Shown: one piece after another, positions 13,786-34,940 of the stretch
Layout: each line of letters starts with the position of its first letter
How positions within the stretch are numbered: the stretch's first letter is position 1
Assembly (NCBI RefSeq): GCF_000315625.1
Contig: NW_005434654.1
Location: 864,593 to 928,592 of the forward strand
DNA length: 64,000 nt
DNA from: Guillardia theta CCMP2712
Taxonomy: Eukaryota > Protista > Cryptophyta
Direction: 5' to 3'
Program-made: the position numbers and the translations under genes
Notes under the pieces: generated by a model
Databases searched by the model: none
Seen by the model: the letters and a program-made list of their open reading frames with translations, nothing else
Told to the model about the DNA's origin: nothing

Positions 13786-16700
13786 TTAGTGGTCATGGTC
13801 TGCCAAGGACTTCATCAGCCGTGCTGTCATCTTCTTAGTCTTGCTGTACGCGTCCTGCACTGACAGTTACCTCTCCTGCTTCCTCCCTCCCTCCCTCCGC
13901 TCACCATCGCCCCGAGAAGCCGCACGTCTCCTTCCTCCACAAGTTTCCTGCACTTTGCTACCTCATCTTCGCCAAGGACGTCCTGTTGAGGCGCGTCAAC
14001 TTTGACAAACACGTCGCTGACTTACCTTGAAGTCTTGGAAAGTATCCGCATCCTCCGCTCCCTTGTGCTTGACAGGCGTCAGATCCTGCTCTGCCTGCAA
14101 GACATCCGCAGGCTGCACGAGCTCGCGAGCTCCGTGTCTTCTGTTAAGGGCAAATCGCCCGATCATGCAGAGAAGCTGTATCCCTACGGCAGCGACGGCG
14201 CACAGGATGGGAGCGAAGGTAAGCCAGTACTGGAGCGTCGTGTTGTCTGCGACACGGTGAGCTGCGGCAAGCGACCTGGGAGCTTCTCACCTGGAGGTGT
14301 GAAGCTTGCTTTGATGTTAACTTTCGTGTTCCCAGACCCGACCAGCCTCCTGGAGTTCTGCACGGACAGAGTCTGCGGGCTCAAGGATCGTCTGGCGGAG
14401 GCTCCGGCAGCCTGCAGCTGTTTGTTGGTCAGCGGCAAGAGTTCTGAGAGGCTCAAAACCTGCTCGTAGCACGCGTTCGCTCGAGCTTGTCCAGGATCCA
14501 TTTGCAGCGATCCGAGCCCCGAGGTGTCGAAGAAGCACTGGACGTAGGTAGAGTTGTGCTTGACCTGAGCAGCCGTCACCATCGAGCTGGAGGCAAGGAA
14601 GACGCACCTCAGGAACGAAGGAGCCCTCGTTGAAGGGGAAGTAGACGATCTGATATAAGCCGTAGTACGGGAGACCGGTAGCCGGGTTAGTGGAGGAACC
14701 AGATGGTCCGACGGCGTAGCTGATGGTGATACCAACGTTTGTGTCCTGATTCCCTCCCAAGCACGGCAAGGTTGCGTCGTTGCCGACAGTCTGGCACAGC
14801 TCGAAGACGATGTCTTCCGAGCCGCTGGGATAGGCTGTGGGGTCTACTCGTAGGAAGTTGCCGTACTTGTCTCTGGTTTGCACGTACAAGGTTGAAGTCG
14901 CACCGGCAACGACGTTGAGGAGATCTCCGTACACGTAGGTCAGCGCGATCTCAGCTGGAGCGCTGGCGATCTCGAGCATGAAAGGAGATCCAGCTCCGCT
15001 CACCCCGGCGAAGGAGATGGAGACCATGTAGCTTCCTGATTGCGTCAAGCGGTAGGTCGTGCCGTAGCTGCCGTCAGCGTTGTCGACGACGTTTCCTGTG
15101 TTGGGGGAGGCCGAGGGGTTGAGAGGAGCTTGAGAGACTACATTCCACAGCGTCAGCAGCACGGAGACGGAGTCTCCACCGGGCCTTCGGTTGAGAAACT
15201 CGTCTCGAGCAGTGATGATGAAGCTTGACGACGTTCCTGCCGTCGAGATGGTGAGGAAGGTTCCCCGCGCCACAGAAGAGGACGGGGAGGTGACTGCCGG
15301 GGACACCACGAGGGTGTATGGGTTTGGATTCGTCTGGCTTGCGCTCGCATCGCCAGCAATGAGGTCCTGGTACTCCTGCCCCCCATTGCCGACGTAGATG
15401 GAGATGGTGTAGGTTCCGGCCTTGACGGGCGAGTATGCGGACTGATAGCTTCCCGAGCCAAGGGAGATGGTGGACGGGGACATGCTGGGGAGGTTGGTCC
15501 CTGTGACGTCGATCCTGAATCTAGCTCCATCTGCGCTTCTACCGAAGACGTCCTGCAACAAGACCATCGCAGGTCACTAGCACGCGCTGACCTCCGGCAG
15601 GTCTCACCCGACACGACAGCGAGAAGAAGGATTTCGATCCTGCAACCGCAGCCGTGAGGCCATCGCCACTGGCGCGGCAGCTCTTGTAGAAAGGCGTCTT
15701 GGTCTGGAACACGAAGAGGTCGCTGCTGTCCTTGGGCACGTCATCGACCACTTGTGTCCCTCCCTGCCCACCACAGGCGTCAGCACACTTGCAGCTTGAG
15801 AGTCACTCGGCTCACGAAGATGTAGATGTAGAGGTTGATGCTGTCGAGCTTGATGCTAGACGCGATGCTGCCTGAAGGCTTGCTGCCCGGAACATCCACC
15901 TGAGAACCTTTCAGCATGCCGAGCGACAGGAGCAGGTCAGCGTACCAGCACCCATGTCAGGCTCGTCGTGCACTTGCCTTGTTGGACGCAGGTAGAGTCG
16001 AGGTTGGTAAGGTTGAGATACCTGGGCGAGCTTGGAGGTCAGAGAACCCTCGAGGTGCGGAGTCGCTGCGATCAGGTACCATAAGTCGTTGAACGCCGTC
16101 GCGTAGGTGGGGAAGTTTCCGTTCATCAGGTCGTACATGCCTGAGCCGACGCATCCTTTGGCGTTGCCGCATCCGAACCCTCCATACACCAGCAGAACCC
16201 CGTTGCTGCTCGCTGAGTTGGACATGGTGGTAACGGCAGCATCCCTCCTCGCCTGGGGGCAGGCGCCTCCAGTGTGGCATGAGGTGTAGAGCTTGGCAAA
16301 GGTCGCCTGCTTGGAAGAGAAGAAAGTCGTGTGGACGTCGGAGCTGAGGTCCCATGTCGCGGTTCTGTTGGCGAGGTCGGTGGACTCTCCGCCGAACATC
16401 ATCAGGAGGAGGAACTGGGCAACATGGTCTGAGCCAGGGCCGCGAGAGCTCAAGGGGACTCACCTTTCCCTGCAGGTTCACAGACACGGTCGAGTGTCCA
16501 TGCAGCGGCCCTGGCAGTGAGCAGCTGGAGGTGCCCGCAGTACAGCCAGTGGGGTTGGAGGAGCCATAGCAGTAGGTGACTGACGAGGGCGGGGAGGTGA
16601 AGTTCTGACAGATGCCTCTCATGCACGCGCCTGCACACAGATGAACCAGTCAAGTCAAGGACAAGAGGGCGCGAGCGAGGGCGCTTACCTGACTTGCAGG

Positions 16701-19700
16701 AGCTCAGCTGGGAAAACTGTGCTGCTCCTCCAATCATGTAGTACTGCCCCAGATAGCTTGTCTTGGACCAGGTGGAGGTCTGCAGGAAAGAGTTGTTTGT
16801 GGCGTACGACCGCGTCATGTAAGTCTGCAGACTGTTTTGCCAGGAGGATGAGTCACTCAGACGTGTCATGATCTGGCGGAAGAGATCGCTTCCGGTGACG
16901 AAGGTGATGTTCAACCTGCTGTTAGAGAGGACCTGTGCGTTCAAGTTGTAGATGTAGCTCATGGACGTGGTTGCTACTGGTGGGTACTGCGGAGAAGGGA
17001 AGAAGTTGCTGGAGACGAAGCCGTAGAAGGTGCTGGAGTCGAAGGACGAGGTGACACCATTGAGGATCAGCGAGATCGTGTATCCGTTGTCAATCTTCGC
17101 AGTGTCGAGGTACCAGAAGTCTCCCAGCGCTTGTCCGTTCACGTCCACCCCTCCATAGATCAGCCCGGCCTGACTTCCGGATATGAACGCATCGTTGATG
17201 ATGGTGTGCAGGCAGCGCGCAGGGATGACGCTGTAAGCGCCGCTAGTTTGAAAGATGAGCTTGAACTGAGAGAGCTGATTGTTGTTGAAGACCAAGATAG
17301 CTGACGTCGAGGTGACCTGGTTGCTGGAGTCAGCGACGGCCCCTCGAGCTGCGAACGTCAGGCCTGGTTTGAAGTTGTTCAAGATGCCGCCATGGGACAC
17401 GAGGACAGTAGCAGTCTGATTGGCCTGGAAGGTGGTGAAAGCGAAGTAGGTCTTGACCTCGCTCTTCAAGCTCTGGTCCACGTTGGTCCACGACCGGCTG
17501 AAGAGGTCAAACTTCCAGAGGTCGTTGAGTCCCTTCTGATTCTGAGTGCCGCCCATCATGACCAGGGTGTACTCGTTGAGGCTTGCCAGACCCGCGTAGC
17601 TTCGCGAGGGAGGGCCTTCGGCAAGGACAGGAAGGTTGGAGAGAGCCTGCGACAGGCTCGAGGAAGAGACATCTACAGTGTAGATACTGTTGCTGAGAGA
17701 GTTTTGCACGAAGCCTCCGAACAGAATCGCATGCGTGGAGTTGGACACTTGCGAGAAGAAGCTGTGCACTGCACCGCTCATGGTATACGCCACGCGTTTC
17801 CCCACCAGGTACTCCAAGGCGTCAATGGTCATCGGATCAGAGATGGACGTCGTCAAGGAGTAGTTGCCGATCAGGGCAAGCGGCAGGAACTGCGAAGACA
17901 AGCCCCCGATGGTGTAGGCTTGATAGCCGGACGCCAAGCTGGCGTACATTGACAAGCCGACTCTGCCCTGTCCGGACGGGTTGATCTCGAGGAGGGTGAA
18001 GGGGCTGAAGCCTTTGAGCGCCTTCTGCAGGTCGAGCATCCAGAGGTCGTTGAGGGGGCTCGTCAAAGCGACGCACACTTGACTGGCGCCTGATGTCGAG
18101 TAGGTCGCGCACCCGATGCCTCCGTATATCAAGAGTTTGCTCTTGGAGACGGCAGCGGTGGCATGCCCGAAGCGAGCTGGGATCCAGCTCAGATCGAACA
18201 CCGTCGGCGAGCAAGTCGCGGAGCCTCCTGGACAGATCTGAAGGAATGGAGCTCTAGACGCGAACTTGGAGCTGTTTGCTTGCGTGTGGGTCAAGTAGCG
18301 CTCGAAGTCCGTCAAGGAGCTCATGGCGGGTCGGGTGGTGGGTAGGATGGAAGGCATCTTGGTAGCGGTGCCGCCTCCCATCACGATGGTCGACGAGCTA
18401 TGAGCTTGTTGGCTCGTGTAGCAAACCTTCTCCCCGCATGACTTTCCTGCCCCTCCCATGTCGCAGCACGGAACAACTGTCGTCGGAGCCCAGTAGGAGT
18501 AGGAGGAGTTGAGCTTGACTAGTGCACTCGAGTCAAGGAAGGAGGAGGGAGGGTCGACAGTAGCCCAGCCTTGAAGCGAGTCGTTGTACAGCGAGATGGC
18601 TGAGTATCCAGGGAGACAGATCTGCAGCGTGTCGGATGAGACGCATCCTCCCTGTCGTCTCATGGCGCTCTGATCTAGCTGAAAGGTCACCCACCCTTGC
18701 ATGCTCGAGCCATGCCAGGAGAACTCCAAGCTCGTTTGCTCGAGCCCAGAGAACTGCGACGAGCTTGGCAACGAGTTGTACATGCGCCGATCAAACCCAT
18801 TCGCTGGCCAAGTGAGAGACACTCGGGGGTTGATGTTGTTTGTGGTTGAGAGGTTTGTGATGTAGAGTGTGTCTGTGGTTGTCGTCTCGTACTGCAGTTG
18901 TATCGTGTCTTGCGAGAGGATCCACTCGTTGGAGGCGAGCAGACCGTTGGAGTTGGAGTAGACGACTTTCTGACTCGCTGGGTTGTACCTGCACATGGCA
19001 GCAGACGGGAAGCGAGGAGGTTGAGCGGTAGCACGGTTCTTGAGCGTGAGAGAGATATTCAAGTACAGCTCTTGGTTGCCATCTTGCTGCATGTCCGTGA
19101 TGATGTAGAAGGAGATCGTGCCCGTGCTCTGAGTCCACAACACCTGACCTGCAGTCGAGCTGCCGCCTGTCGCACTTATTCCGTCGCAATTGGACTTACA
19201 GGAAGCCTGCGGGTTGTTGACTCCGCTCCAGCTGCAGTAGGTCGAGGTAGGAGCCTTGCAGCTCACGTTCAACAGCGTATCGTTGCCAGCAGTCTGAGAG
19301 CCCACGAGCCCGGTGATGGTCACGTCGGTTCCTCCAGGCTGATTAACTTTGAAACCGTTCGAGCCTTGGTTGCCCTGGCTGGAGGAGAAGACAAACGACA
19401 GGGTGATCTGGTTGTCTGCACCATGGAGTCTGGTGGTCTCGTCGCCAGTGAATGAGAAGGGATAGTATGGGCTGCAGGATGGAGGACCTTGAGCCTGATT
19501 GCTCTGACTGTTCGAGTTGCTATTTGCAGACGAGCCTGGATTGCTTCCAGAAGAAGACGAATTTGAAGAGTTCGTTTGAGAGCCATTATGCGGGTTTGGC
19601 TGCTCTGCAAGAAGTTCGTAACGTACTTCAGCTGAAGGGTCCAGACCAAGTGCCTTGAGCGTCCTCGAGCCTGAGCTTTTGACCCCCTCTCGCTTGCGCC

Positions 19701-22700
19701 CATCCATCACCTCTCGTACAAACGACTCAAGCTCATCGATGCTTCTCAAGTCCTTCTTGTAGAGGACATGAGCCAGTGTCTGCTTGTCGCTTTTGCTTCT
19801 GAGCTGGTTCAGGTCTCCCCGGTACTGACCTGGTTGCATGCTGGCCGAGATGTTGCAGTCGATGATCACTCGGTCGTCTTGGGTGTATGTGACGTCGCAG
19901 TACATGCTGGGTGTAGAGCTCGAGCCCGGGGCTTGAGTATCTGGTCCCTTTGGTGTAGTCTGAGTGCAGGGGCATACTTGCTGAAGGGGATACGTGCTGG
20001 AGCCCGGTACGTCACAGTGCGTTGAGTTCTTGAAGTAGCAGATTCCCTGGGTGCTGCAACATGGGTCCTTGGTATTGTTTCCGCAATGGGACACGGGACA
20101 GGCAGATGGGCAAGTCCCTACGCCCGACGAGACTGAAGGCATCCCTCCGTACACGCCCGACATGGTCTTGGGGTCAAAGCAAGAGCACGTCCAGCTGATG
20201 CAGTAGCTCGAGGGGCACCAGTCCGGAGCGAACGAGTTGGTCTTTCCAGGGCCGCACTTGGGAAGAAAAGGAGGGCCGCCATTCTGCGAGCAGATGACTC
20301 CTTCGTCGGTGTATCCGATGTTGGGGTTACAAACCGAGCACACCCGATACAGATTGGTCGGGCACAGACAGGCTGGCACGTCCTTGGGGCAGTTCGGTAT
20401 GTCCTGGCACTGGCAGATACCGGTCTGCGAGATCGCAGTCTGAAAGCTCGTATCGCTCATTTGAGAGGCTGCACAGTCCGTGTCAAAGTACTCGCAGTTC
20501 CCGAAGGTACACGAGTCTGCACGGGGGCAGCCCGAGCAGTAGTCCGTCAAGTTTTGACTTTGACACTCCGAGCCTCCGCCGGTAGCTGTGTTCACGACCA
20601 GACCATTGCGAATGGGTTGATCAAACGTCAGCTCGATCAGAAGCAGGCTGCTGTACGAGGACCCGACCGACGTGTTGTACATGCTCTCCTTGACAGGCTT
20701 GGCAACGTGATGCATCTGCACGTCGTAGTCCTGCCATCATCATCAGCACACTGGCCATCCCGCGCACACGCTCATCGCAGAGTCTTGAGAGCACCTGCAT
20801 GGGAAGCCCGCTCACAGGATCTCGTGCAGCCGGCGTCCGCTTGCCAGTCTTGTCCATGGGGTACAGAAAGGCGTAGGGGTTACAGCGCGAGGGATCAGAA
20901 AGATCCGGGCATGCGGGCCACCAAAGACGGAAGTTATCAATGTAGCCTTTGAACAGCTTGAGCGTCTCCGAGGCCGCCGGGTTTCCCCCTCCGATGTAGA
21001 TGTCGGAGATGCCCTGTGACAAGCGGAGGGAGTTGCTGATGTCAAGAGACAAGAAGTTCCTTCCCTGCTCTGACACGCTGCTGCCGTCAAGAAACATGAA
21101 TGCTTGCGTCAGCACAGCGTCGGGATAGGGGTTGGTCTGTGAGTAGAGCCTACCAAACCTCAGCGTGAAGCACACATGGTGCCACACGCCCAGCACGCTG
21201 CTTGGTATCGGGCCCCAAGTCTTCACCACCACGTCCTGACTATCCGGCAAGAGCGTCAGCCTCACGAAGAGACTGTTGCCCGAGGCATAAACAGTCCAGC
21301 GCAGCAACGACAGTACCCCGTTGTAGGCATCAAGCAGCACAACGCCAGCTGGATCTTGGCTTTGAAGTTGTACCCACATGTCGATCCACAGCGTCCCCAA
21401 GCCCGTCGATGACTGGCACCTACACACCCGTCATGCAGGACCTCGCGCATCAGCTGCTGGCTTACCAGGAAGGCAGGGTCATGGCTATGATGCTGGTGAT
21501 CCCATCGAAGCTTGCCATCTTGTCTTTGGCGCTCGACTCCTGAGACATCCAGCCCTCTGTCAGTACCAAGCATCGCTCTCACGAGCAGGCGCTTACCGCT
21601 TCTGCCGAGTCCATGACCCACAAGTCATTCCTGGGCTGAGGGAGGTTGCAGCTCCCTTGCTTGCCCGGACAGTCGATGGACGCTCCTCCGAACAAGACGA
21701 TGGGCTTCAAGTACTGTCCGAACGACTCCATGACTGTCAGGGTAGCGAACGCGCGATCCGTCGGCCACGAGCTTGCTGTTTGAACCTGCTTCCATTCCAG
21801 GGTGAACATGCTCAGACTCCACATCGTGCTGGTGCTCTGGAACCCCGGGATAGACCCGGCTGCGTTCGAGCATTGAGACCCTGCTAGTCGAAGACCGCCG
21901 AAGACAAACTGGTATGATCCCTCGCTCGTGTACGCCGCAAACACGAGCGGCTCGGGGGCGTACACCTGAAGCGGCTTGGCCGCGCACGAGGCATCCGTAC
22001 CGTAGATGCATCGCCAAGTCTGAGCAGAAAGATCGAGGGCCCAGAGGTCTTGGAAGATCTCCTGCTCAGACATCCCTTGAGCAACGTACATGGTCGATGA
22101 CGTCGAGTCATAGAACGCGACGTGCCCACACCGAGCCGAGGGGCTGTTTCCGGTCTGCAGCGCTGCAGCAGCGTATCAGACACTCGACCAGCAAGGGCGC
22201 AGCCCCGCCCGTCACCTGACTGCCAGCCGCTGGATGTCTTGAACAAGGCCAGGTGACCAGCCGCCAAGGAGTCCTTGTCAAGACCGCCGAAGATCATCAC
22301 CTCCGTCGAAGAGATTACGCCGCTCGATATGTAGCTCGCGAGCGGCGACGCGTCTGACGACCCGTACTGACTCCACACGAGAGTCAGGATGTCGAACATC
22401 CATGTATCCGACAGGACCTGTGACATGTACATCAGCGCATGGCGCCATGACCCCGCCAGCATCCCCGACACGAGAGTCCAAGACTTACCGAGGATGCTCC
22501 CACGCCTTCGGGGCCTTGCCCGCCGTGTACATAGATCTGAAACCCGGCCATCCACATGGCGTGGTATGCTCGAGCCGATGGTGAGGCCGAGATGGGCATG
22601 ATTTCTACCCATCGCGCGGCTGATCGATTGGTGTACTGCTTGAGCACCCAGAAGCTGGACTGAGGGGTCTGCGATTCCCCATCGTCTACTATCCCGTCAA

Positions 22701-23550
22701 AGACAAAGAGCTCCTGCAGACTGACATGGAATGCACTGGCGTGCCCATGCCGAGGATGGGGGAGTAGAGAGCTTGTGGGGTTGCAGCTGCTCCATGTCCG
22801 CGTGGTAGGAGAGGACACGTTGAGGTACCAGCAGTCGTTCAGACTCTTGCCCACGGCCATCCCCACTCCCCCGAAGACGAAAACAACTTGATTCCTGTCG
22901 TCATATGCCATGCTATGGCCGTACCGGTTCTCGGGCCCAGGCCCGTCGAACCGCATCGGGTCCCACGTGGGTTGCGGGCTGATGATAAACCTCCAGCAGT
23001 CTAGCAGCCCTCTCCCCATGGATGATTTCTGCGGTGTCGCGAAGCCTCCGCACAGGAGGGCCGACGCCCCCACCGATATCATCGTATGCTGTGCACGCGG
23101 GCCGGGGACATGCCGGTTGATGGTGCTCGCAGCACACTGAGCATCGTAGATCGTATGGTTCGGGAAGAAGACTACTTCCTCCCAGCTGTTGGCTGCCGAG
23201 TCATACTTCCAAGTATCCCCAAGCACTACCATGGCGCTTCCTATGTTGTTGATCCTGCAAGCAGTACAGTGAGTCGCACGGGGCAGTGCAGGTCAGGCTT
23301 GTACATACCCGCCATGGAGGAAGACGAAGCCTTCAGAAGTGCTGAGCGTTGTAGTGGCGTAAGCGTAGCGAGGGGACGGACCGGATCCACCGGGCTGGAT
23401 GAGCTGCCATTGGAGAGCTAGAGGGAAGAGGGGTTAAGCAGGCACAGGATGGGGGGCAGGCAGCCGGTACTTACGGAGGGCGAAGGTAGAGACGGAGAGA
23501 GACAAGACAAGGAGGAGTCGGAATCTTATTGTGCTTCGATAATTTCTCAT
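13786..23550 (-). CDS. Giant kelch/LamG/Cys-rich/filamin type-I membrane protein, short-linker copy (A); ~18 exons, ~3,000 aa
   Basis: ATG at 23550 gives MRNYRSTIRFRLLLVLSLSVSTFA-LPLQW (signal peptide). Kelch motifs (PSPRYAY, VFVFGG, NDCW, PARFGHA, LNDLW), LamG-like (GVWHHVCFTL...FKGYIDNFRLW), Cys-rich block, filamin-type repeats (FIITARDEFLNRRPGGD, VVDNADGSYGTTY), TM (WLTFAPILCAVAAVGIQLLCMIG), tail ending ...MKSLADHDH* with TAA at 13786-13788. Confidence 0.85.
13793..23508. repeat. Left arm of giant inverted repeat (9.7 kb)
   Basis: Reverse complement of 24663-34888. Paired coordinates sum to 48171 in the inner block and 48684 in the outer block (48681 at the far end after two small intronic indels); mirrored ORFs are visible throughout the ORF track. 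Confidence 0.97.
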
Positions 23551-24626
23551 TTCCTTTTTTCGGGAGTGTGGAATCGGCAATGAATTTAAACAACAATCAG
23601 GTTACAAGAGCGCAGGTCACGGAAGAAAATGCAGTGAAGAACAATGGAGAATTAATTGATTAGTGGAAAAATTTGTAGCGCATGGTTATCTTCATGCATT
23701 TTTCTTCTCCGTTCTCCTTGTTCTACCCATCCTGATCAGGCCATGATATCGGTATTTTAACTGCTGTGAGGGACGCAAATGGTTGTAGTGAGGATCGAAT
23801 TGATGAAAATATTTCTCTTTTGGAAATCAGTGAAATGTGAAGTGTGACTATGATTGAAATTTAGTACAGATATTTGAAAATTTTGCCATTGCAAGATTCG
23901 TGATTTTGCAACGATTTCGAAGAAAGGATCCATCATTTGGCTTTAAGTAATATTTTACAGTACCAAGAGCTTGAATGGTTTTACTCCTGGCCTGCAAATC
24001 GGAAGGGTCATTTTTCCGGACGGGGTCAGATCACAATTGAGTTGATAGATGAGGTGCTGATTTTTAACTTAACTTTGAGTAAAAGATGAGGTGCTAGTTA
24101 TTACTACTGACTCAGTGAATAACTGCTTTTTTCTTTTTCTTGTCTGCGGGCCCCGAAAGACCCCCGTAAAGTGCCCGGCAGGTACCCCTAGACACCCCTA
24201 CCCCCTACCCCACCCCCCGCTCCCCTATCCTTCATGTAAAAGTCACCAGGTATACTTCAATGTTAAAGTCCCAGTGTGACTTATCGGTTCCAGCAACCCT
24301 ACCCCATGGATCGAGGTAAAACTGACCCCTCCCTTGCTCCTCTCCCCTCGCATTTTCCGCACAATCAAACCGCGATCATGTCCCCGTTGTCTCAGTCATC
24401 CCAGCCTCCTTTGAGCTTCAGGCACGAAGCAAACACTCATTGACTACATTCATCCAAGTTGATTCCTTACCAGTCCACGACTAGTTGCTTCAAAAACATC
24501 CTATCTCAATATCTAACAGTTCTCGAACAAGAACTGATACTTTAGGAACACATCACTTTTGTAGAGATTCCTTGCGGGTAAGACATGTATTGAATACAGA
24601 CTTCGTGCTGAAACCAATACCCGAGA
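23551..24626. promoter_or_regulatory. Unique 1.08-kb divergent (bidirectional) promoter region between the two start codons
   Basis: AT-richer non-coding spacer directly upstream of both ATGs (23550 minus, 24627 plus). No long ORF. Role inferred from position only. Confidence 0.6.
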
Positions 24627-27600
24627 ATGACAGAATATAATACTATCTTTGAAACAATCATCGTCTTGTCTCTCTCCGTCTCTACCTTCGCCCTCCGTAA
24701 GTACCGGCTGCCTGCCCCCCATCCTGTGCCTGCTTAACCCCTCTTCCCTCTAGCTCTCCAATGGCAGCTCATCCAGCCCGGTGGATCCGGTCCGTCCCCT
24801 CGCTACGCCTACGCCACTACAACGCTCAGCACTTCTGAAGGCTTCGTCTTCCTCCATGGCGGGTATGTACAAGCCTGACCTGCACTCCCCCGTGCGACTC
24901 ACTGTACTGCTTGCAGGATCAACAACATAGGAAGCTCCATGGTAGTGCTTGGGGATACTTGGAAGTATGACTCGGCAGCCAACAGCTGGGAGGAAGTAGT
25001 CTTCTTCCCGAACCATACGATCTACGATGCTCAGTGTGCTGCGAGCACCATCAACCGGCATGTCCCCGGCCCGCGTGCACAGCATACGATGATATCGGTG
25101 GGGGCGTCGGCCCTCCTGTGCGGAGGCTTCGCGACACCGCAGAAATCATCCATGGGGAGAGGGCTGCTAGACTGCTGGAGGTTTATCATCAGCCCGCAAC
25201 CCACGTGGGACCCGATGCGGTTCGACGGGCCTGGGCCCGAGAACCGGTACGGCCATAGCATGGCATATGACGACAGGAATCAAGTTGTTTTCGTCTTCGG
25301 GGGAGTGGGGATGGCCGTGGGCAAGAGTCTGAACGACTGCTGGTACCTCAACGTGTCCTCTCCTACCACGCGGACATGGAGCAGCTGCAACCCCACAAGC
25401 TCTCTACTCCCCCATCCTCGGCATGGGCACGCCAGTGCATTCCATGTCAGTCTGCAGGAGCTCTTTGTCTTTGACGGGATAGTAGACGATGGGGAATCGC
25501 AGACCCCTCAGTCCAGCTTCTGGGTGCTCAAGCAGTACACCAATCGATCAGCCGCGCGATGGGTAGAAATCATGCCCATCTCGGCCTCACCATCGGCTCG
25601 AGCATACCACGCCATGTGGATGGCCGGGTTTCAGATCTATGTACACGGCGGGCAAGGCCCCGAAGGCGTGGGAGCATCCTCGGTAAGTCTTGGACTCTCG
25701 TGTCGGGGATGCTGGCGGGGTCATGGCGCCATGCGCTGATGTACATGTCACAGGTCCTGTCGGATACATGGATGTTCGACATCCTGACTCTCGTGTGGAG
25801 TCAGTACGGGTCGTCAGACGCGTCGCCGCTCGCGAGCTACATATCGAGCGGCGTAATCTCTTCGACGGAGGTGATGATCTTCGGCGGTCTTGACAAGGAC
25901 TCCTTGGCGGCTGGTCACCTGGCCTTGTTCAAGACATCCAGCGGCTGGCAGTCAGGTGACGGGCGGGGCTGCGCCCTTGCTGGTCGAGTGTCTGATACGC
26001 TGCTGCAGCGCTGCAGACCGGAAACAGCCCCTCGGCTCGGTGTGGGCACGTCGCGTTCTATGACTCGACGTCATCGACCATGTACGTTGCTCAAGGGATG
26101 TCTGAGCAGGAGATCTTCCAAGACCTCTGGGCCCTCGATCTTTCTGCTCAGACTTGGCGATGCATCTACGGTACGGATGCCTCGTGCGCGGCCAAGCCGC
26201 TTCAGGTGTACGCCCCCGAGCCGCTCGTGTTTGCGGCGTACACGAGCGAGGGATCATACCAGTTTGTCTTCGGCGGTCTTCGACCAGCAGGGTCTCAATG
26301 CTCGAACGCAGCCGGGTCTATCCCGGGGTTCCAGAGCACCAGCACGATGTGGAGTCTGAGCATGTTCACCCTGGAATGGAAGCAGGTTCAAACAGCAAGC
26401 TCGTGGCCGACGGATCGCGCGTTCGCTACCCTGACAGTCATGGAGTCGTTCGGACAGTACTTGAAGCCCATCGTCTTGTTCGGAGGAGCGTCCATCGACT
26501 GTCCGGGCAAGCAAGGGAGCTGCAACCTCCCTCAGCCCAGGAATGACTTGTGGGTCATGGACTCGGCAGAAGCGGTAAGCGCCTGCTCGTGAGAGCGATG
26601 CTTGGTACTGACAGAGGGCTGGATGTCTCAGGAGTCGAGCGCCAAAGACAAGATGGCAAGCTTCGATGGGATCACCAGCATCATAGCCATGACCCTGCCT
26701 TCCTGGTAAGCCAGCAGCTGATGCGCGAGGTCCTGCATGACGGGTGTGTAGGTGCCAGTCATCGACGGGCTTGGGGACGCTGTGGATCGACATGTGGGTA
26801 CAACTTCAAAGCCAAGATCCAGCTGGCGTTGTGCTGCTTGATGCCTACAACGGGGTACTGTCGTTGCTGCGCTGGACTGTTTATGCCTCGGGCAACAGTC
26901 TCTTCGTGAGGCTGACGCTCTTGCCGGATAGTCAGGACGTGGTGGTGAAGACTTGGGGCCCGATACCAAGCAGCGTGCTGGGCGTGTGGCACCATGTGTG
27001 CTTCACGCTGAGGTTTGGTAGGCTCTACTCACAGACCAACCCCTATCCCGACGCTGTGCTGACGCAAGCATTCATGTTTCTTGACGGCAGCAGCGTGTCA
27101 GAGCAGGGAAGGAACTTCTTGTCTCTTGACATCAGCAACTCCCTCCGCTTGTCACAGGGCATCTCCGACATCTACATCGGAGGGGGAAACCCGGCGGCCT
27201 CGGAGACGCTCAAGCTGTTCAAAGGCTACATTGATAACTTCCGTCTTTGGTGGCCCGCATGCCCGGATCTTTCTGATCCCTCGCGCTGTAACCCCTACGC
27301 CTTTCTGTACCCCATGGACAAGACTGGCAAGCGGACGCCGGCTGCACGAGATCCTGTGAGCGGGCTTCCCATGCAGGTGCTCTCAAGACTCTGCGATGAG
27401 CGTGTGCGCGGGATGGCCAGTGTGCTGATGATGATGGCAGGACTACGACGTGCAGATGCATCACGTTGCCAAGCCTGTCAAGGAGAGCATGTACAACACG
27501 TCGGTCGGGTCCTCGTACAGCAGCCTGCTTCTGATCGAGCTGACGTTTGATCAACCCATTCGCAATGGTCTGGTCGTGAACACAGCTACCGGCGGAGGCT

Positions 27601-30600
27601 CGGAGTGTCAAAGTCAAAACTTGACGGACTACTGCTCGGGCTGCCCCCGTGCAGACTCGTGTACCTTCGGGAACTGCGAGTACTTTGACACGGACTGTGC
27701 AGCCTCTCAAATGAGCGATACGAGCTTTCAGACTGCGATCTCGCAGACCGGTATCTGCCAGTGCCAGGACATACCGAACTGCCCCAAGGACGTGCCAGCC
27801 TGTCTGTGCCCGACCAATCTGTATCGGGTGTGCTCGGTTTGTAACCCCAACATCGGATACACCGACGAAGGAGTCATCTGCTCGCAGAATGGCGGCCCTC
27901 CTTTTCTTCCCAAGTGCGGCCCTGGAAAGACCAACTCGTTCGCTCCGGACTGGTGCCCCTCGAGCTACTGCATCAGCTGGACGTGCTCTTGCTTTGACCC
28001 CAAGACCATGTCGGGCGTGTACGGAGGGATGCCTTCAGTCTCGTCGGGCGTAGGGACTTGCCCATCTGCCTGTCCCGTGTCCCATTGCGGAAACAATACC
28101 AAGGACCCATGTTGCAGCACCCAGGGAATCTGCTACTTCAAGAACTCAACGCACTGTGACGTACCGGGCTCCAGCACGTATCCCCTTCAGCAAGTATGCC
28201 CCTGCACTCAGACTACACCAAAGGGACCAGATACTCAAGCCCCGGGCTCGAGCTCTACACCCAGCATGTACTGCGACGTCACATACACCCAAGACGACCG
28301 AGTGATCATCGACTGCAACATCTCGGCCAGCATGCAACCAGGTCAGTACAGGGGAGACCTGAACCAGCTCAGAAGCAAAAGCGACAAGCAGACACTGGCT
28401 CATGCCCTCTACAAGAAGGACTTGAGAAGCATCGATGAGCTTGAGTCGTTTGTACGAGAGGTGATGGATGGGCGCAAGCGAGAGGGGGTCAAAAGCTCAG
28501 GCTCGAGGACGCTCAAGGCACTTGGTCTAGACCCTTCAGCTGAAATAAGTTACCAGCTAGATGTCCTTCATCCGTCTGCCAATCACAATGGAACTGCCAC
28601 AACGACAACGTCGTCGAACAGCTCGTCGTCTTCGTCATCATCGAACAGCTCGTCGTCTTCGTCATCATCGAACAGCTCGTCGTCTTCGTCATCATCGAAC
28701 AGCTCGTCGTCTTCGTCATCATCGAACAGCTCGTCGTCTTCGTTGTCATCGAACAGCTCGTCGTCTTCGTCGTCATCGAACAGCTCATCGTCGTCGTCAT
28801 TGTCGAATACATCATCCACCGGTTCGGTGAGCAAGCATACCACCAGTGATTCATCCTCAAACTCGTCTTCTGCCAGTTCGTCGAACCATACTGCTAATAC
28901 CAGCTCCACCACTACCTCAAATGACAAGACAACTACAATAAGTGGAGGTCAATCGTCCGGTGAATCATCAGGCAACAGCTCAAACACCAGCACTACTTCA
29001 AATGACCAGACGAACAATGTTGGAAACTCTCATTTGCCAGCAAGTAACTCAGAGTCAGAATTGTCCACCAACAGCACAACCTCAAATCATTCATCGTCAA
29101 AAAATAACCATACTACAGGCTTGTCTGAATCTTCTGGAAGCAATCCAGGCTCGTCTGCAAATAGCAATTCGAACAGTCAGAGCAATCAGGCTCAAGGTCC
29201 TCCATCCTGCAGCCCATACTATCCCTTCTCATTCACTGGCGACGAGACCACCAGACTCCATGGTGCAGACAACCAGATCACCCTGTCGTTTGTCTTCTCC
29301 TCCAGCCAGGGCAACCAAGGCTCGAACGGTTTCAAAGTTAATCAGCCTGGAGGAACCGACGTGACCATCACCGGGCTCGTGGGCTCTCAGACTGCTGGCA
29401 ACGATACGCTGTTGAACGTGAGCTGCAAGGCTCCTACCTCGACCTACTGCAGCTGGAGCGGAGTCAACAACCCGCAGGCTTCCTGTAAGTCCAATTGCGA
29501 CGGAATAAGTGCGACAGGCGGCAGCTCGACTGCAGGTCAGGTGTTGTGGACTCAGAGCACGGGCACGATCTCCTTCTACATCATCACGGACATGCAGCAA
29601 GATGGCAACCAAGAGCTGTACTTGAATATCTCTCTCACGCTCAAGAACCGTGCTACCGCTCAACCTCCTCGCTTCCCGTCTGCTGCCATGTGCAGGTACA
29701 ACCCAGCGAGTCAGAAAGTCGTCTACTCCAACTCCAACGGTCTGCTCGCCTCCAACGAGTGGATCCTCTCGCAAGACACGATACAACTGCAGTACGAGAC
29801 GACAACCACAGACACACTCTACATCACAAACCTCTCAACCACAAACAACATCAACCCCCGAGTGTCTCTCACTTGGCCAGCGAATGGGTTTGATCGGCGC
29901 ATGTACAACTCGTTGCCAAGCTCGTCGCAGTTCTCTGGGCTCGAGCAAACGAGCTTGGAGTTCTCCTGGCATGGCTCGAGCATGCAAGGGTGGGTGACCT
30001 TTCAGCTAGATCAGAGCGCCATGAGACGACAGGGAGGATGCGTCTCATCCGACACGCTGCAGATCTGTCTCCCTGGATACTCAGCCATCTCGCTGTACAA
30101 CGACTCGCTTCAAGGCTGGGCTACTGTCGACCCTCCCTCCTCCTTCCTTGACTCGAGTGCACTAGTCAAGCTCAACTCCTCCTACTCCTACTGGGCTCCG
30201 ACGACAGTCGTGCCGTGCTGCGACATGGGAGGGGCAGGAAAGTCATGCGGGGAGAAGGTTTGCTACACGAGCCAACAAGCTCATAGCTCGTCGACCATCG
30301 TGATGGGAGGCGGCACCGCTACCAAGATGCCTTCCATCCTACCCACCACCCGACCCGCCATGAGCTCCTTGACGGACTTCGAGCGCTACTTGACCCACAC
30401 GCAAGCAAACAGCTCCAAGTTCGCGTCTAGAGCTCCATTCCTTCAGATCTGTCCAGGAGGCTCCGCGACTTGCTCGCCGACGGTGTTCGATCTGAGCTGG
30501 ATCCCAGCTCGCTTCGGGCATGCCACCGCTGCCGTCTCCAAGAGCAAACTCTTGATATACGGAGGCATCGGGTGCGCGACCTACTCGACATCAGGCGCCA

Positions 30601-33600
30601 GTCAAGTGTGCGTCGCTTTGACGAGCCCCCTCAACGACCTCTGGATGCTCGACCTGCAGAAGGCGCTCAAAGGCTTCAGCCCCTTCACCCTCCTCGAGAT
30701 CAACCCGTCCGGACAGGGCAGAGTCGGCTTGTCACTGTACGCCAGCTTGGCGTCCGGCTATCAAGCCTACACCATCGGGGGCTTGTCTTCGCAGTTCCTG
30801 CCGCTTGCCCTGATCGGCAACTACTCCTTGACGACGTCCATCTCTGATCCGATGACCATTGACGCCTTGGAGTACCTGGTGGGGAAACGCGTGGCGTATA
30901 CCATGAGCGGTGCAGTGCACAGCTTCTTCTCGCAAGTGTCCAACTCCACGCATGCGATTCTGTTCGGAGGCTTCGTGCAAAACTCTCTCAGCAACAGTAT
31001 CTACACTGTAGATGTCTCTTCCTCGAGCCTGTCGCAGGCTCTCTCCAACCTTCCTGTCCTTGCCGAAGGCCCTCCCTCGCGAAGCTACGCGGGTCTGGCA
31101 AGCCTCAACGAGTACACCCTGGTCATGATGGGCGGCACTCAGAATCAGAAGGGACTCAACGACCTCTGGAAGTTTGACCTCTTCAGCCGGTCGTGGACCA
31201 ACGTGGACCAGAGCTTGAAGAGCGAGGTCAAGACCTACTTCGCTTTCACCACCTTCCAGGCCAATCAGACTGCTACTGTCCTCGTGTCCCATGGCGGCAT
31301 CTTGAACAACTTCAAACCAGGCCTGACGTTCGCAGCTCGAGGGGCCATCGCTGACTCCAGCAACCAGGTCACCTCGACGTCAGCTATCTTGGTCTTCAAC
31401 AACAATCAGCTCTCTCAGTTCAAGCTCATCTTTCAAACTAGCGGCGCTTACAGCGTCATCCCTGCGCGCTGCCTGCACACCATCATCAACGATGCGTTCA
31501 TATCCGGAAGTCAGGCCGGGCTGATCTATGGAGGGGTGGACGTGAACGGACAAGCGCTGGGAGACTTCTGGTACCTCGACACAGCGAAGATTGACAACGG
31601 ATACACGATCTCGCTGATCCTCAATGGTGTCACCTCGTCCTTCGACTCCAGCACCTTCTACGGCTTCGTCTCCAGCAACTTCTTCCCTTCTCCGCAGTAC
31701 CCACCAGTAGCAACCACGTCCATGAGCTACATCTACAACTTGAATGCACAAGTCCTCTCTAACAGCAGGTTGAACATCACCTTCGTCACCGGAAGCGATC
31801 TCTTCCGCCAGATCATGACACGTCTGAGTGACTCATCCTCCTGGCAAAACAGTCTGCAGACTTACATGACGCGGTCGTACGCCACAAACAACTCTTTCCT
31901 GCAGACCTCCACCTGGTCCAAGACAAGCTATCTGGGGCAGTACTACATGATTGGAGGAGCAGCACAGTTTTCCCAGCTGAGCTCCTGCAAGTCAGGTAAG
32001 CGCCCTCGCTCGCGCCCTCTTGTCCTTGACTCGACTGGTTCATCTGTGTGCAGGCGCGTGCATGAGAGGCATCTGTCAGAACTTCACCTCCCCGCCCTCG
32101 TCAGTCACCTACTGCTATGGCTCCTCCAACCCCACTGGCTGTACTGCGGGCACCACCAGCTGCTCACTGCCAGGGCCGCTGCATGGACACTCGACCGTGT
32201 CTGTGAACCTGCAGGGAAAGGTGAGTCCCCTTGAGCTCTCGCGGCCCTGGCTCAGACCATGTTGCCCAGTTCCTCCTCCTGATGATGTTCGGCGGAGAGT
32301 CCACCGACCTCGCCAACAGAACCGCGACATGGGACCTCAGCTCCGACGTCCACACGACTTTCTTCTCTTCCAAGCAGGCGACCTTTGCCAAGCTCTACAC
32401 CTCATGCCACACTGGAGGCGCCTGCCCCCAGGCGAGGAGGGATGCTGCCGTTACCACCATGTCCAACTCAGCGAGCAGCAACGGGGTTCTGCTGGTGTAT
32501 GGAGGGTTCGGATGCGGCAACCCCAAAGGATGCGTCGGCTCAGGCATGTACGACCTGATGAACGGAAACTTCCCCACCTACGCGACGGCGTTCAACGACT
32601 TATGGTACCTGATCGCAGCGACTCCGCACCTCGAGGGTTCTCTGACCTCCAAGCTCGCCCAGGTATCTCAACCTTACCAACCTCGACTCTACCTGCGTCC
32701 AACAAGGCAAGTGCACGACGAGCCTGACATGGGTGCTGGTACGCTGACCTGCTCCTGTCGCTCGGCATGCTGAAAGGTTCTCAGGTGGATGTTCCGGGCA
32801 GCAAGCCTTCAGGCAGCATCGCGTCTAGCATCAAGCTCGACAGCATCAACCTCTACATCTACATCTTCGTGAGCCGAGTGACTCTCAAGCTGCAAGTGTG
32901 CTGACGCCTTTGGTGGGCAGGGAGGGACACAAGTGGTCGATGACGTGCCCAAGGACAGCAGCGACCTCTTCGTGTTCCAGACCAAGACGCCTTTCTACAA
33001 GAGCTGCCGCGCCAGTGGCGATGGCCTCACGGCTGCGGTTGCAGGATCGAAATCCTTCTTCTCGCTGTCGTGTCGGGTGAGACCTGCCGGAGGTCAGCGC
33101 GTGCTAGTGACCTGCGATGGTCTTGTTGCAGGACGTCTTCGGTAGAAGCGCAGATGGAGCTAGATTCAGGATCGACGTCACAGGGACCAACCTCCCCAGC
33201 ATGTCCCCATCCACCATCTCCCTTGGCTCGGGAAGCTATCAGTCCGCATACTCGCCCGTCAAGGCCGGAACCTACACCATCTCCATCTACGTCGGCAAAG
33301 GGGGGCAGGAGTACCAGGACCTCATTGCCGGCGATGCGAGCGCAAGCCAGACGAATCCAAACCCATACACCCTCGTGGTGTCCCCGGCAGTCACTTCCCC
33401 GTCCTCTTCTGTGGCGCGGGGAACCTTCCTCACCATCTCGACGGCAGGAACGTCGTCAAGCTTCATCATCACTGCTCGAGACGAGTTTCTCAACCGAAGG
33501 CCCGGTGGAGACTCCGTCTCCGTGCTGCTGACGCTGTGGAATGTAGTCTCTCAAGCTCCTCTCAACCCCTCGGCCTCCCCCAACACAGGAAACGTCGTCG

Positions 33601-34940
33601 ACAACGCTGACGGCAGCTACGGCACGACCTACCGCTTGACGCAATCAGGAAGCTACATGGTCTCCATCTCCTTCGCCGGGGTGAGCGGAGCTGGATCTCC
33701 TTTCATGCTCGAGATCGCCAGCGCTCCAGCTGAGATCGCGCTGACCTACGTGTACGGAGATCTCCTCAACGTCGTTGCCGGTGCGACTTCAACCTTGTAC
33801 GTGCAGACCAGAGACAAGTACGGCAACTTCATACGAGTAGACCCCACAGCCTATCCCAGCGGCTCGGAAGACATCGTCTTCGAGCTGTGCCAGACTATCG
33901 GCAACGACGCAACCTTGCCGTGCTTGGGAGGGAATCAGGACACAAACGTTGGTATCACCATCAGCTACGCCGTCGGACCATCTGGTTCCTCCACTAACCC
34001 GGCTACCGGTCTCCCGTACTACGGCTTATATCAGATCGTCTACTTCCCCTTCAACGAGGGCTCCTTCGTTCCTGAGGTGCGTCTTCCTTGCCTCCAGCTC
34101 GATGGTGACGGCTGCTCAGGTCAAGCACAACTCTACCTACGTCCAGTGCTTCTTCGACACCTCGGGGCTCGGATCGCTGCAAATGGATCCTGGACAAGCT
34201 CGAGCGAACGCGTGCTACGAGCAGGTTTTGAGCCTCTCAGAACTCTTGCCGCTGACCAACAAACAGCTGCAGGCTGCCGGAGCCTCCGCCAGACGATCCT
34301 TGAGCCCGCAGACTCTGTCCGTGCAGAACTCCAGGAGGCTGGTCGGGTCTGGGAACACGAAAGTTGACATCAAAGCAAGCTTCACACCTCCAGGTGAGAA
34401 GCTCCCAGGTCGCTTGCCGCAGCTCACCGTGTCGCAGACAACACGACGCTCCAGTACTGGCTTACCTTCGCTCCCATCCTGTGCGCCGTCGCTGCCGTAG
34501 GGATACAGCTTCTCTGCATGATCGGGCGATTTGCCCTTAACAGAAGACACGGAGCTCGCGAGCTCGTGCAGCCTGCGGATGTCTTGCAGGCAGAGCAGGA
34601 TCTGACGCCGGTCAAGCACAAGGGAGCGGAGGATGCGGATACTTTCCAAGACTTCAAGGTGAAGTCGGCGACGTGTTTGTCAAAGTTGACGCGCCTCAAC
34701 AGGACGTGCTTGGCGAAGATGAGGTAGCAAAGTGCAGGAAACTTGTGGAGGAAGGAGACGTGCGGCTTCTCGGGGCGATGGTGAGCGGAGGGAGGGAGGA
34801 AGCAGGAGAGGTAACTGTCAGTGCAGGACGCGTACAGCAAGACTAAGAAGATGACAGCACGGCTGATGAAGTCCTTGGCAGACCATGAAGAATCAACGGT
34901 TACACATTTGAGAATCCCTCCGTCGGCATGTGTTGAGTAG
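24627..34940 (+). CDS. Giant kelch/LamG/Cys-rich/filamin type-I membrane protein, long-linker copy (B); ~18 exons, ~3,150 aa
   Basis: ATG at 24627 gives MTEYNTIFETIIVLSLSVSTFA-LPLQW in frame. About 17 GT-AG introns (e.g. 24697-24753, 24863-24916, 27377-27440, 31996-32053, 34659-34702, 34781-34826). Same domains as copy A plus a 171-aa longer Ser/Asn/Thr linker. Ends ...MKSLADHEESTVTHLRIPPSACVE* (TAG 34938-34940). Confidence 0.85.
24663..34888. repeat. Right arm of giant inverted repeat (10.2 kb)
   Basis: Matches the reverse complement of 13793-23508 except for the segment 28545-29129 and scattered substitutions. Confidence 0.97.
28614..28808 (+). repeat. Coding 27-bp tandem repeat (TCGAACAGCTCGTCGTCTTCGTCATCA) x7 encoding SNSSSSSSS
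   Basis: Units start at 28614, 28641, 28668, 28695, 28722, 28749 and 28776; the first four are identical and the last three degenerate. Confidence 0.95.

What the first reader, a model, noticed from the sequence alone, without database searches (positions are those of the whole stretch)
28545..29129. One internal variable segment: 72 bp in copy A versus 585 bp in copy B, old in divergence, not a simple indel
Seen: identity stops abruptly after ...GLDPSAE and resumes at SSGSNPG. Copy A (19555-19626) reads VRYELLAEQPNPHNGSQTNSSNSS; copy B reads ISYQLDVLHPSANHNGTATTTTSSNSS... followed by ~170 more Ser/Asn/Thr residues. The first ~20 residues still align at protein level (Y.L...P..HNG...SSNSS) but differ heavily in DNA. 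Inference: this island records the real age of the duplication and has been protected from conversion, either mechanically by length heterology or by selection to keep two isoforms. The frame is preserved (difference 513 bp = 171 codons), giving short- and long-linker versions of the same ectodomain.
Basis: partly seen in the sequence, partly recalled or inferred. Interest (0 to 1): 0.82.

Follow-up and report, generated by a model that had tools for sequence, protein, structure and literature searches.

The report
Old variable linker in duplicated surface-protein gene
Two near-identical, head-to-head copies of a giant surface-protein gene in the alga Guillardia theta differ only in one Ser/Asn-rich linker (24 versus 195 residues). 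That difference is far older than the rest of the duplication, but only the short copy is seen as RNA, so this is a clean though fairly ordinary case of duplicate-gene evolution.

Summary
The window is Guillardia theta CCMP2712 scaffold JH992984.1. It holds a 9.7/10.2-kb inverted duplication (arms 13793-23513 and 24658-34888, spacer 1144 nt) of a 19-exon gene for a roughly 2900-aa single-pass Kelch/LamG/Filamin surface protein. The arms are 99.6% identical except in exon 6, where copy A has 72 nt and copy B has 585 nt, both in frame.

The island is real DNA: 2026 reads give half depth over it and about 45% copy-A letters at the sites that tell the copies apart. It is not an intron. It stays open, and its 7 indels against a metagenomic relative are all multiples of 3. 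Its non-repetitive head aligns between the copies better than shuffles do (3 of 5000), yet 47% of those bases differ. After correcting for the locally fast clock, that is about 36-fold too old for the flanks.

- Contigs from relatives cross the repeat boundaries into copy-A flanks and carry the long island. The duplication is therefore probably younger than the short/long difference and does not date it.
- Flank divergence is uneven and rises at every homology edge, which fits arm-to-arm gene conversion.
- Only short copy A (annotated as GUITHDRAFT_105561) is seen in RNA. Long copy B is intact but unannotated and undetected in RNA.

The parts
13793..23513 (-). Arm A of the inverted duplication. 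This is the parental copy: the gene GUITHDRAFT_105561 (P0003, 2867 aa as annotated).
   Evidence: Repeat mapping. P0003 maps with 0 mismatches as 17 exons and 16 GT-AG introns of 43-71 nt. Relatives' contigs L001 and L004 continue into its outer and inner flanks.
24658..34888 (+). Arm B, the inverted daughter copy. It is intact but has no gene model in GCA_000315625.1.
   Evidence: Transferring the exon coordinates gives an open 3053-aa ORF with all splice sites kept. No gene is called there in the reference.
23514..24657 (.). Unique 1144-nt spacer between the two heads. It holds both predicted start codons (A at 23550, B at 24627) and the 5' regions.
   Evidence: There is no similarity between the two halves.
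19555..19626 (-). Short island (copy A), 24 codons: VRYELLAEQPNPHNGSQTNSSNSS.
   Evidence: It is present in annotated protein P0003, in the RNA contig of X6 at depth about 400, and in runs of 4 studies.
28545..29129 (+). Long island (copy B), 195 codons: 49% Ser, 13% Thr, 13% Asn, with 17 N-x-S/T sequons.
   Evidence: DNA support comes from X1 and X28, with no RNA depth in X6. The orthologous 732-nt in-frame island in relative L001 differs by 7 indels, all multiples of 3, and has 0 stops in frame.
28614..28807 (+). 27-nt (9-codon, SNSSSSSSS) tandem repeat x7.2 inside the long island.
   Evidence: The array differs in length and composition in L001.
27441..31995 (+). Copy B exon 6, the exon that holds the island. 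The equivalent in A is 20730-16689.
   Evidence: The upstream introns 26706-26751 and 27377-27440 are confirmed by RNA contig joints.
24627..34940 (+). Predicted full CDS of copy B (19 exons, about 3120 aa). Its own start is MTEYNTIFETII... and its own 16-residue C-terminal tail is ...ADHEESTVTHLRIPPSACVE*.
   Evidence: The 5' exons are predicted only.
13786..23550 (-). Predicted full CDS of copy A (about 2936 aa), with signal-peptide-like start MRNYRSTIRFRLLLVLSLSVSTFAL and the native end ...ADHDH*.
   Evidence: The X6 RNA contig extends about 400 nt beyond the annotated ATG, by arithmetic.

Best explanation
A gene for a giant single-pass cell-surface protein was duplicated head-to-head in the Guillardia theta lineage. 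The protein has a signal peptide, N-terminal Kelch propellers, a LamG-like domain, a Cys-rich region, a Ser/Asn/Thr-rich linker, an orphan beta-rich region, more Kelch repeats, Filamin/Ig repeats, a transmembrane helix and a short tail. Copy A is the parental locus. It keeps the native start, stop and flanks, and it is the copy that is annotated and strongly transcribed. Copy B is the inverted daughter. Both of its ends are duplication breakpoints inside the first and last coding exons, so it has a foreign start, a foreign tail and no copy of A's promoter. It is not detectably transcribed. The arms are nearly identical because the duplication is fairly young and because arm-to-arm gene conversion keeps homogenising them. 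Conversion works within each homologous block and fades towards every homology edge, and the island is one of those edges. The island is the inter-domain, mucin-like linker. It evolves several times faster than the rest of the gene, including by in-frame tandem-repeat slippage. Its two forms split long before the duplication. The long form is the one found at the parental locus in a relative and in copy B. The short form now sits in copy A. I infer that it came from an old alternative haplotype or allele, or from an unsampled source, rather than arising by divergence after the duplication. Shown: the anatomy, the coding status of both forms, the age discrepancy, the uneven flank divergence and the expression asymmetry. 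Inferred: gene conversion as the homogeniser, the single-copy state of relatives, the source of the short form, and the extracellular glycosylated-stalk role of the linker.
For: Anatomy. Organism and gene. Domains.

Copy A is parental. L001 ends ...ADHDH* and then runs 145 nt into the A-type 3' flank. L004 carries the A-type start MRNYRST.. and 530 nt of the A-side spacer. L004 also matches A at the two boundary-adjacent sites.

Relatives are probably single copy. De Bruijn contigs cross three places where a second copy would make a fork: the inner boundary, the outer boundary and the island/downstream junction.

The long form is coding and older than the split. L001's island is 732 nt with 0 in-frame stops against 4-17 in the other frames. 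All 7 indels are multiples of 3, and dN/dS is 0.43.

Age discrepancy. The A-B head differs at 47% of bases (JC about 0.74), against about 13% for B-L001 (about 0.14), a ratio of about 5. The flank dS is 0.0097 for A-B against 0.068 for L001, a ratio of 0.14 (and a hand count).

Conversion signature. The inner interior has 1 difference in 3411 nt against 24 in 5759 for the outer arm (p = 1e-5). Divergence rises within 200-300 nt of all four homology edges.

Expression. The X6 RNA contig (depth about 400, introns removed) has copy-A letters at all 7 discriminating sites plus the A island. The B island has depth 0. X7 and X8 hold 1.00 of the A-island words but only 0.71 of the B region, which is what flanks alone would give. 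B is unannotated.
Against: The single-copy state of relatives rests on how metagenome assemblers behave at forks. It was not checked on reads, and L001 could be a chimera of two copies.

No short-type island was found outside G. theta, so its supposed old independent history has no direct witness.

Synonymous divergence in the island is 3.6 times that of the flanks (p = 9e-5). The region is therefore mutation-prone and clock arguments are soft.

The alignable head is only about 16-19 residues, and I chose its limits post hoc.

Contigs drop rare variants, so weak or condition-specific expression of B is not excluded. The one raw-read RNA run (X19) barely expresses the gene at all: 1 read.
Confidence: 0.45

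Rival explanations
1. The inverted duplication is ancient, as old as the island divergence. Both copies have coexisted since then, and continual arm-to-arm gene conversion has erased divergence everywhere except the island. The island is shielded by its length and sequence heterology, or by selection for two forms.
For: The conversion signatures are real: uneven divergence and edge effects, with the island behaving as an edge. A and B are sisters relative to L001 in the outer arm (10 A-derived against 13 B-derived sites), as concerted evolution predicts. A crossover between the outer arms would swap which island is linked to which 3' end, and that could produce L001's 'long island + A-type 3' end'. 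This is a well-known process in palindromes (PMC3723533).
Against: L004 and L001 run through the inner and outer repeat boundaries and the island/downstream junction without breaking, and only into A-type flanks. With two near-identical copies these places would be forks. No second ORF of this gene from relatives was found in any length class searched. Edge divergence (about 2-3%) is no higher than the divergence from the relative in the same stretch.
Confidence: 0.3
2. There is no ancient history. After a recent duplication, the hypermutable low-complexity linker of copy A was remodelled in place by a large in-frame deletion plus repeat slippage and clustered mutation. The residual similarity of the heads is what remains.
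For: The linker region evolves fast. The island tail is 12.5% diverged from L001 and the 96 nt upstream is 10% diverged, against about 2.5% elsewhere. The repeat array changes length between lineages. Unanchored DNA similarity of the A island to the B island is no better than shuffles.
Against: The head is not repetitive. It would need 21 changes in 45 nt while 9.6 kb of flanks took 33. Even at the locally raised rate, the head divergence is about 5 times that between B and L001. Conserved Y, L, P and HNG in the same order, with synonymous differences at 4 of the 6 conserved codons, looks like long purifying selection and not a mutational burst (and a hand count).
Confidence: 0.1
3. The 585-nt segment is not protein-coding in vivo because it is an intron or a retained insertion, or the two-copy structure is an assembly artefact made from two alleles.
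For: No RNA covers the B island, so its splicing cannot be observed directly. The window is the 2012 draft assembly.
Against: The 16 introns of this gene are 43-71 nt. The island is open in frame in two lineages, with only 3n indels and dN/dS below 1. Independent 2026 reads show half depth over the island and about 45% A letters, with no other heterozygous sites in 4.4 kb. The 2011-read contig breaks exactly at the inner repeat boundary, as expected when two different continuations exist. The copies have different starts, tails and flanks.
Confidence: 0.04

Closest known systems
Sex-chromosome palindromes with arm-to-arm gene conversion (for example human Y palindrome P6, PMC3723533; X palindromes, PMC8981503)
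   Same: Inverted arms more than 99% identical around a unique spacer. Paralogous sequence variants are unevenly spread. Homogenisation occurs by intrachromosomal conversion, and rare inversions arise by crossover between the arms.
   Different: Here each arm is essentially one gene (about 10 kb) in a protist nuclear genome. The arms enclose an internal heterologous block that behaves as a homology edge. Only one arm's gene is seen as RNA. Conversion is inferred from one genome plus two relatives' contigs, not from a population phylogeny.
Interlocus gene conversion between young inverted paralogs with regions that escape conversion (Caenorhabditis, PMC3966223; Drosophila, PMC3924832)
   Same: Closely linked inverted duplicates have mosaic identity, so flank divergence underestimates age.
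   Different: The unconverted block here appears older than the duplication itself, which simple post-duplication divergence does not give.
Ser/Thr-rich tandem-repeat (mucin-like) stalks of cell-surface adhesins such as fungal FLO/ALS proteins (from general knowledge, not tested here)
   Same: An in-frame tandem repeat (27 nt) with Ser/Thr/Asn-rich, sequon-dense composition lies between folded ectodomain modules. Its length changes between lineages by 3n indels.
   Different: There is no sequence relationship. Glycosylation and surface location are inferred only. The two forms also differ in a non-repetitive head, not only in repeat number.
Silent-cassette systems (yeast MAT/HML/HMR Y regions; pilE/pilS, VSG donors) (resemblance from general knowledge)
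   Same: An expressed locus and a silent copy share long identical homology on both sides of a short, unrelated-looking alternative block.
   Different: No evidence of switching, of a nuclease site or of silencing was sought or found here. This is a lead only.
Attractin/MEGF8-type Kelch-propeller ectodomain membrane proteins (Pfam PF24981)
   Same: Kelch beta-propellers lie in the predicted ectodomain of a single-pass protein. PF24981 matches at 4.7e-45.
   Different: The protein has no CUB, EGF, PSI or C-type lectin set. It has LamG-like and Filamin/GEX2-Ig repeats and two orphan regions. Homologues found are only two metagenomic proteins at 28-29% identity.

Membership tests
Palindromic paralogs homogenised by arm-to-arm gene conversion | Inverted arms with very high identity around a unique spacer | tested here: met
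   Arms 13793-23513 and 24658-34888 differ at 33 substitutions and 2 small indels outside the island. The spacer is 1144 nt.
Palindromic paralogs homogenised by arm-to-arm gene conversion | Divergence between the arms is uneven along their length (tract-like blocks, less homogenisation near homology edges) | tested here: met
   1 difference in 3411 nt (inner) against 24 in 5759 nt (outer), p = 1e-5. There are 3 differences in the 200 nt before the island, p = 3e-5. About 1% of sites differ within 300 nt of the four edges, against 0.25% in the interior.
Palindromic paralogs homogenised by arm-to-arm gene conversion | The duplication is shared with relatives, yet the arms are closer to each other than to their orthologues (concerted evolution) | tested here: inconclusive
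   The arms are closer to each other (dS 0.0097) than to L001 (0.068). However, relatives' contigs suggest they have a single copy. This was not checked on reads.
Mucin-like Ser/Thr-rich tandem-repeat linker of a surface protein | Ser/Thr-rich low-complexity composition with in-frame tandem repeats | tested here: met
   S 49%, T 13%, N 13%. A 27-nt unit is repeated 7.2 times. There are 17 N-x-S/T sequons, against 3 in the short form.
Mucin-like Ser/Thr-rich tandem-repeat linker of a surface protein | Length polymorphism between lineages that preserves the frame | tested here: met
   585 nt (B) against 732 nt (L001). All 7 indels are multiples of 3, with no in-frame stops.
Mucin-like Ser/Thr-rich tandem-repeat linker of a surface protein | Extracellular location and glycosylation | not testable with these tools
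   Supported only by a predicted signal-peptide-like start and a C-terminal hydrophobic helix. The AF2 single-sequence model was uninformative (pLDDT 35).
Spliceosomal intron | Removed from mRNA, with GT..AG ends and a size typical for the genome | tested here: not met
   No joint removing 28545-29129 with B-type flanks appears in RNA contigs, although B RNA itself was not detected. The island borders are CA..AA for the observed A/B joint. The gene's introns are 43-71 nt. The frame is conserved across lineages.
Two expressed isoform-encoding paralogs | Both copies are transcribed | tested here: not met
   Only copy-A letters and the A island appear in X6 RNA contigs. The X7 and X8 word shares fit A only. 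The sole B trace is a 57-nt, depth-2.6 piece in the repeat. Contigs cannot prove absence.

The most novel reading that the evidence does not exclude
The palindrome is a cassette or flip device for surface variation. The silent copy B archives the long linker. It could reach the expressed locus in two ways. One is gene conversion spanning the island. The other is a crossover in the 3.9-kb inner arms that inverts the 1.1-kb spacer carrying the active promoter and start. Either would switch the cell between short-stalk and long-stalk forms. The relative with the long island at the parental locus would then be a switched state, and selection for switchability would keep the island dimorphic.
Probability: 0.05. 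Interest if true: 0.85.

Novelty: new member of a known kind. Interest (0 to 1): 0.4.

Why it matters
This is a clean, quantifiable example in a cryptophyte nuclear genome. A short block in a duplicated gene is tens of times 'older' than its surroundings, and the block behaves as an edge for homogenisation. Flank identity therefore cannot be used to date duplicates here.

The work also corrects the reference annotation. An intact gene copy of about 3120 aa is missing from it. The annotated model lacks its signal-peptide exons.

It also points to a possible genome-wide habit of inverted duplications bounded by coding regions. If the short and long linkers prove to be an old maintained dimorphism, or a switchable pair, that would bear on how a free-living alga varies its cell surface. 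As it stands, the function of the protein is unknown and the long form has no expression evidence.

Tried and rejected
- A JGI metagenome scan with six conserved peptides from the post-island domain found no relatives.
- A word-based protein search with a 504-aa piece centred on the short island found nothing.
- Searches with the 1594-aa ORF and with P0003 residues 737-2085 gave only one 96% relative fragment (P0001) and two 28-29% metagenomic homologues. No third paralog emerged as a donor for the short island, but the G. theta annotation is incomplete.
- A blastn-short/tblastn search for a donor of the short island in the window and the fetched loci found none.
- There is no residual similarity beyond the repeat boundaries. 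The similarity of the two N-terminal starts is weak (p about 0.026 for protein, not significant for DNA).
- ESM Atlas look-ups for the domains flanking the linker gave no usable hit.
- The AF2 single-sequence model of residues 1000-1300 had pLDDT 35 and was unusable.
- The raw-read RNA run X19 laid only 1 read, so it gave no strand, level or splice information for either copy.
- A runs test on A-derived against B-derived sites along the outer arm (10 runs observed, about 12.3 expected; hand calculation) gave no sign that L001 is a mosaic.
- Literature searches for the gene id and for G. theta palindromes found nothing specific.
Full report
**What is there**

The window is 100% identical to Guillardia theta CCMP2712 scaffold JH992984.1 of GCA_000315625.1. 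It contains an inverted duplication with arm A at 13793-23513 and arm B at 24658-34888, around a unique 1144-nt spacer. Outside one block the arms differ at 33 substitutions and two small indels. The block is 72 nt in A (19555-19626) and 585 nt in B (28545-29129). The B block holds a 27-nt repeat x7.2 coding SNSSSSSSS.

**The gene**

A 90%-identity cluster look-up returned GUITHDRAFT_105561 / XP_005835914.1, a 2867-aa 'hypothetical protein' (P0003). It maps on arm A with no mismatch as 17 exons and 16 GT-AG introns of 43-71 nt, and it carries the short block in exon 6.

Pfam finds:
- Kelch propellers, including the attractin/LZTR1 type, at the N-terminus and again around residue 1800;
- a weak LamG_3 match;
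- Filamin/GEX2-type Ig repeats near the C-terminus.

A hydrophobic helix and a short tail follow.

Two further in-frame 5' exons, missing from the model, give each copy a signal-peptide-like start. Copy A begins MRNYRSTIRFRLLLVLSLSV at 23550. Copy B begins MTEYNTIFETIIVLSLSV at 24627. Transferring the exon coordinates to arm B gives an intact 3053-aa ORF (about 3120 aa with the 5' exons) with every splice site kept.

The repeat's inner end lies about 12 codons after the start codon, and its outer end lies 2 codons before the stop. As a result B reads on for 16 foreign codons (...ADHEESTVTHLRIPPSACVE*), whereas A ends ...ADHDH*. The reference annotation has no gene at B.

**Is the structure real?**

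- Independent 2026 DNA reads (X28, 38-nt ChIP input-type reads) give a depth of about 20 on the flanks and about 10 on the B block.
- At sites 28350, 28405, 28529, 29168 and 30735, 33-61% of letters (about 45% pooled) are copy-A letters.
- The pair 30209/30212 shows none. Two mismatches in 38 nt fall under the 95% filter, so this is expected.
- No other variable site appears in the 4.4 kb laid.
- The 2011 reads contain a 446-nt contig inside the B block. They also contain a contig that ends exactly at the inner repeat boundary, which is what two different continuations would produce.
- Words of the A block are held by runs of four studies.

An artefact made from two alleles is therefore very unlikely.

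**Intron?**

The RNA run X6 is truly RNA, because its contig skips introns 26706-26751 and 27377-27440. It shows no joint that removes the block from a B-type transcript.

More telling is the metagenomic relative L001 (ENA ERZ930071, about 97% identical). It has the long form too. Its block is 732 nt, has no in-frame stop (4 and 17 in the other frames), and has 7 indels against B that are all multiples of 3. The ungapped tail has dN/dS 0.43 (Fisher p = 0.03). A 585-nt intron would also be about ten times the size of this gene's introns. The long form is coding sequence.

**Is the head similarity real, and how old is it?**

When the first 16 (A) and 19 (B) residues are aligned anchored at the left border, they score 19 against -7.6 +/- 6.6 for shuffles (3 of 5000). 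At DNA level 89 of 5000 shuffles reach the observed score. An unanchored DNA alignment of the A block against the whole B block is no better than shuffles. So homology is supported for the non-repetitive head only, and I chose its limits after looking.

In the codon alignment, 21 of 45 bases differ, and 4 of the 6 conserved residues (Y, L, P, H, N, G) differ at the third position.

The region is intrinsically fast:
- B against L001 differs at 12.5% in the block's tail (dS 0.245), compared with dS 0.068 downstream (p = 9e-5).
- It differs at about 13% in the head and at 10% in the 96 nt upstream.

Using this local clock, the A-B head (JC about 0.74) is about 5 times as old as the B-L001 split (about 0.14). 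In the flanks, A-B (dS 0.0097) is only 0.14 times the L001 distance. That is a 36-fold discrepancy. 'Old, not a simple indel' stands.

**Gene conversion**

A-B differences are not evenly spread:
- The inner interior (24937-28349) has 1 difference in 3411 nt, against 24 in 5759 nt for the outer arm (p = 1e-5).
- There are 3 differences in the last 200 nt before the block (p = 3e-5).
- Density is about four-fold higher within 300 nt of the four homology edges than in the interior.

This is the pattern expected if conversion tracts homogenise each homologous block and seldom include its edges, with the block acting as one such edge. Differences outside the island are 15 synonymous to 10 non-synonymous. 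For the post-island part, omega is about 0.21. Polarised by L001, B-derived changes are 6 non-synonymous to 6 synonymous, and A-derived changes are 2 to 6. This hints at relaxed constraint in B but is not significant.

**Which came first?**

L001 ends with the native ...ADHDH* stop and 145 nt of the A-type 3' flank. A second relative's contig, L004 (Logan, SRR23967302), carries the A-type start and 530 nt of A-side spacer, and it matches A at the two boundary-adjacent sites. A is therefore the parental locus and B the daughter.

Both contigs come from de Bruijn assemblies. They pass through the inner boundary, the outer boundary and the block/downstream junction. In a genome with two near-identical copies all three places would be forks. 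The simplest reading is that these relatives have one copy, and that the copy carries the LONG block.

The duplication is then younger than the split from the relatives, which agrees with A-B dS being smaller than the L001 dS. The short/long split is several times older than that split. So the block does not date the duplication. The dimorphism predates it, and the short form reached locus A from an old alternative haplotype or an unsampled source.

The assembler-behaviour argument was not checked on reads. A crossover between the outer arms could also give L001's combination.

**Expression**

In X6 (2014, depth about 400) the transcript contig has copy-A letters at all seven discriminating sites and the A block ('skips 576, 63 letters between'). 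The B block has depth 0, apart from a 57-nt, depth-2.6 piece in the repeat. X7 and X8 (2018) hold all the A-block words but only 0.71 of the B region, which is the share expected from flanks alone.

B did not inherit A's upstream region, and the two spacer halves are unrelated. The raw-read run X19 has essentially no reads for either copy, so the gene is condition-dependent. 'Two isoforms' is therefore a possibility but has not been shown.

**Comparison with known systems**

The system works like sex-chromosome palindromes and like young inverted paralogs under interlocus conversion (PMC3723533, PMC8981503, PMC3966223, PMC3924832). The block itself behaves like the length-variable Ser/Thr-rich stalks of surface adhesins. 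The resemblance to silent-cassette systems is a lead only.

Homologues of the protein are scarce: two metagenomic proteins at 28-29% identity. One of them starts with a short Ser/Asn-rich stretch.

**Verdict**

It is a good teaching case and a correction to the annotation, but it belongs to a known kind, and the more exciting functional reading is unsupported by the RNA at hand. Interest 0.4.

Noticed in passing
window 24627-34940 (+): Copy B is an intact gene of 19 exons and about 3120 aa, with its own start and a 16-residue private C-terminal tail. It has no gene model in GCA_000315625.1.
   Followed up: partly
window 23550-23254 (-) and 24627-24917 (+): The annotated model GUITHDRAFT_105561 starts at 23232 and misses two in-frame 5' exons that supply a signal-peptide-like N-terminus. 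The X6 transcript contig extends about 400 nt beyond the annotated ATG.
   Followed up: partly
window 23513/24658 and 13793/34888: Both ends of the 10-kb duplication fall inside the CDS, about 12 codons after the ATG and 2 codons before the stop. Other first-reader notes report more inverted duplications bounded by coding regions in this genome, so this may be a genome-wide pattern. Its mechanism is unknown.
   Followed up: no
window 24937-28349 versus 29130-34888: The two halves of the arms have very different A-B divergence (0.03% against 0.42%). At least one recent multi-kb homogenisation seems to have been confined to the promoter-proximal half.
   Followed up: yes
L001:3-98 and L001:90-821: Between G. 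theta and the relative, the linker and the 96 nt before it are 10-13% diverged, against about 2.5% elsewhere. Synonymous sites are included (dS 0.245 against 0.068). This is either a local mutation hotspot or older coalescence.
   Followed up: partly
window 26600-31000 (runs X6 versus X19): The gene is very strongly represented in one transcriptome (contig depth about 400) and almost absent from another (1 read in 764 million letters). Expression depends on conditions.
   Followed up: no
L002:5998-12690 (P0002): The 29%-identical marine metagenomic homologue begins with a short Ser/Asn-rich stretch (NDASSNASCNSTGNSSCNSSNSSSVSSS). This may be the equivalent linker, with separate Kelch and orphan ORFs upstream on the same contig.
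   Followed up: no
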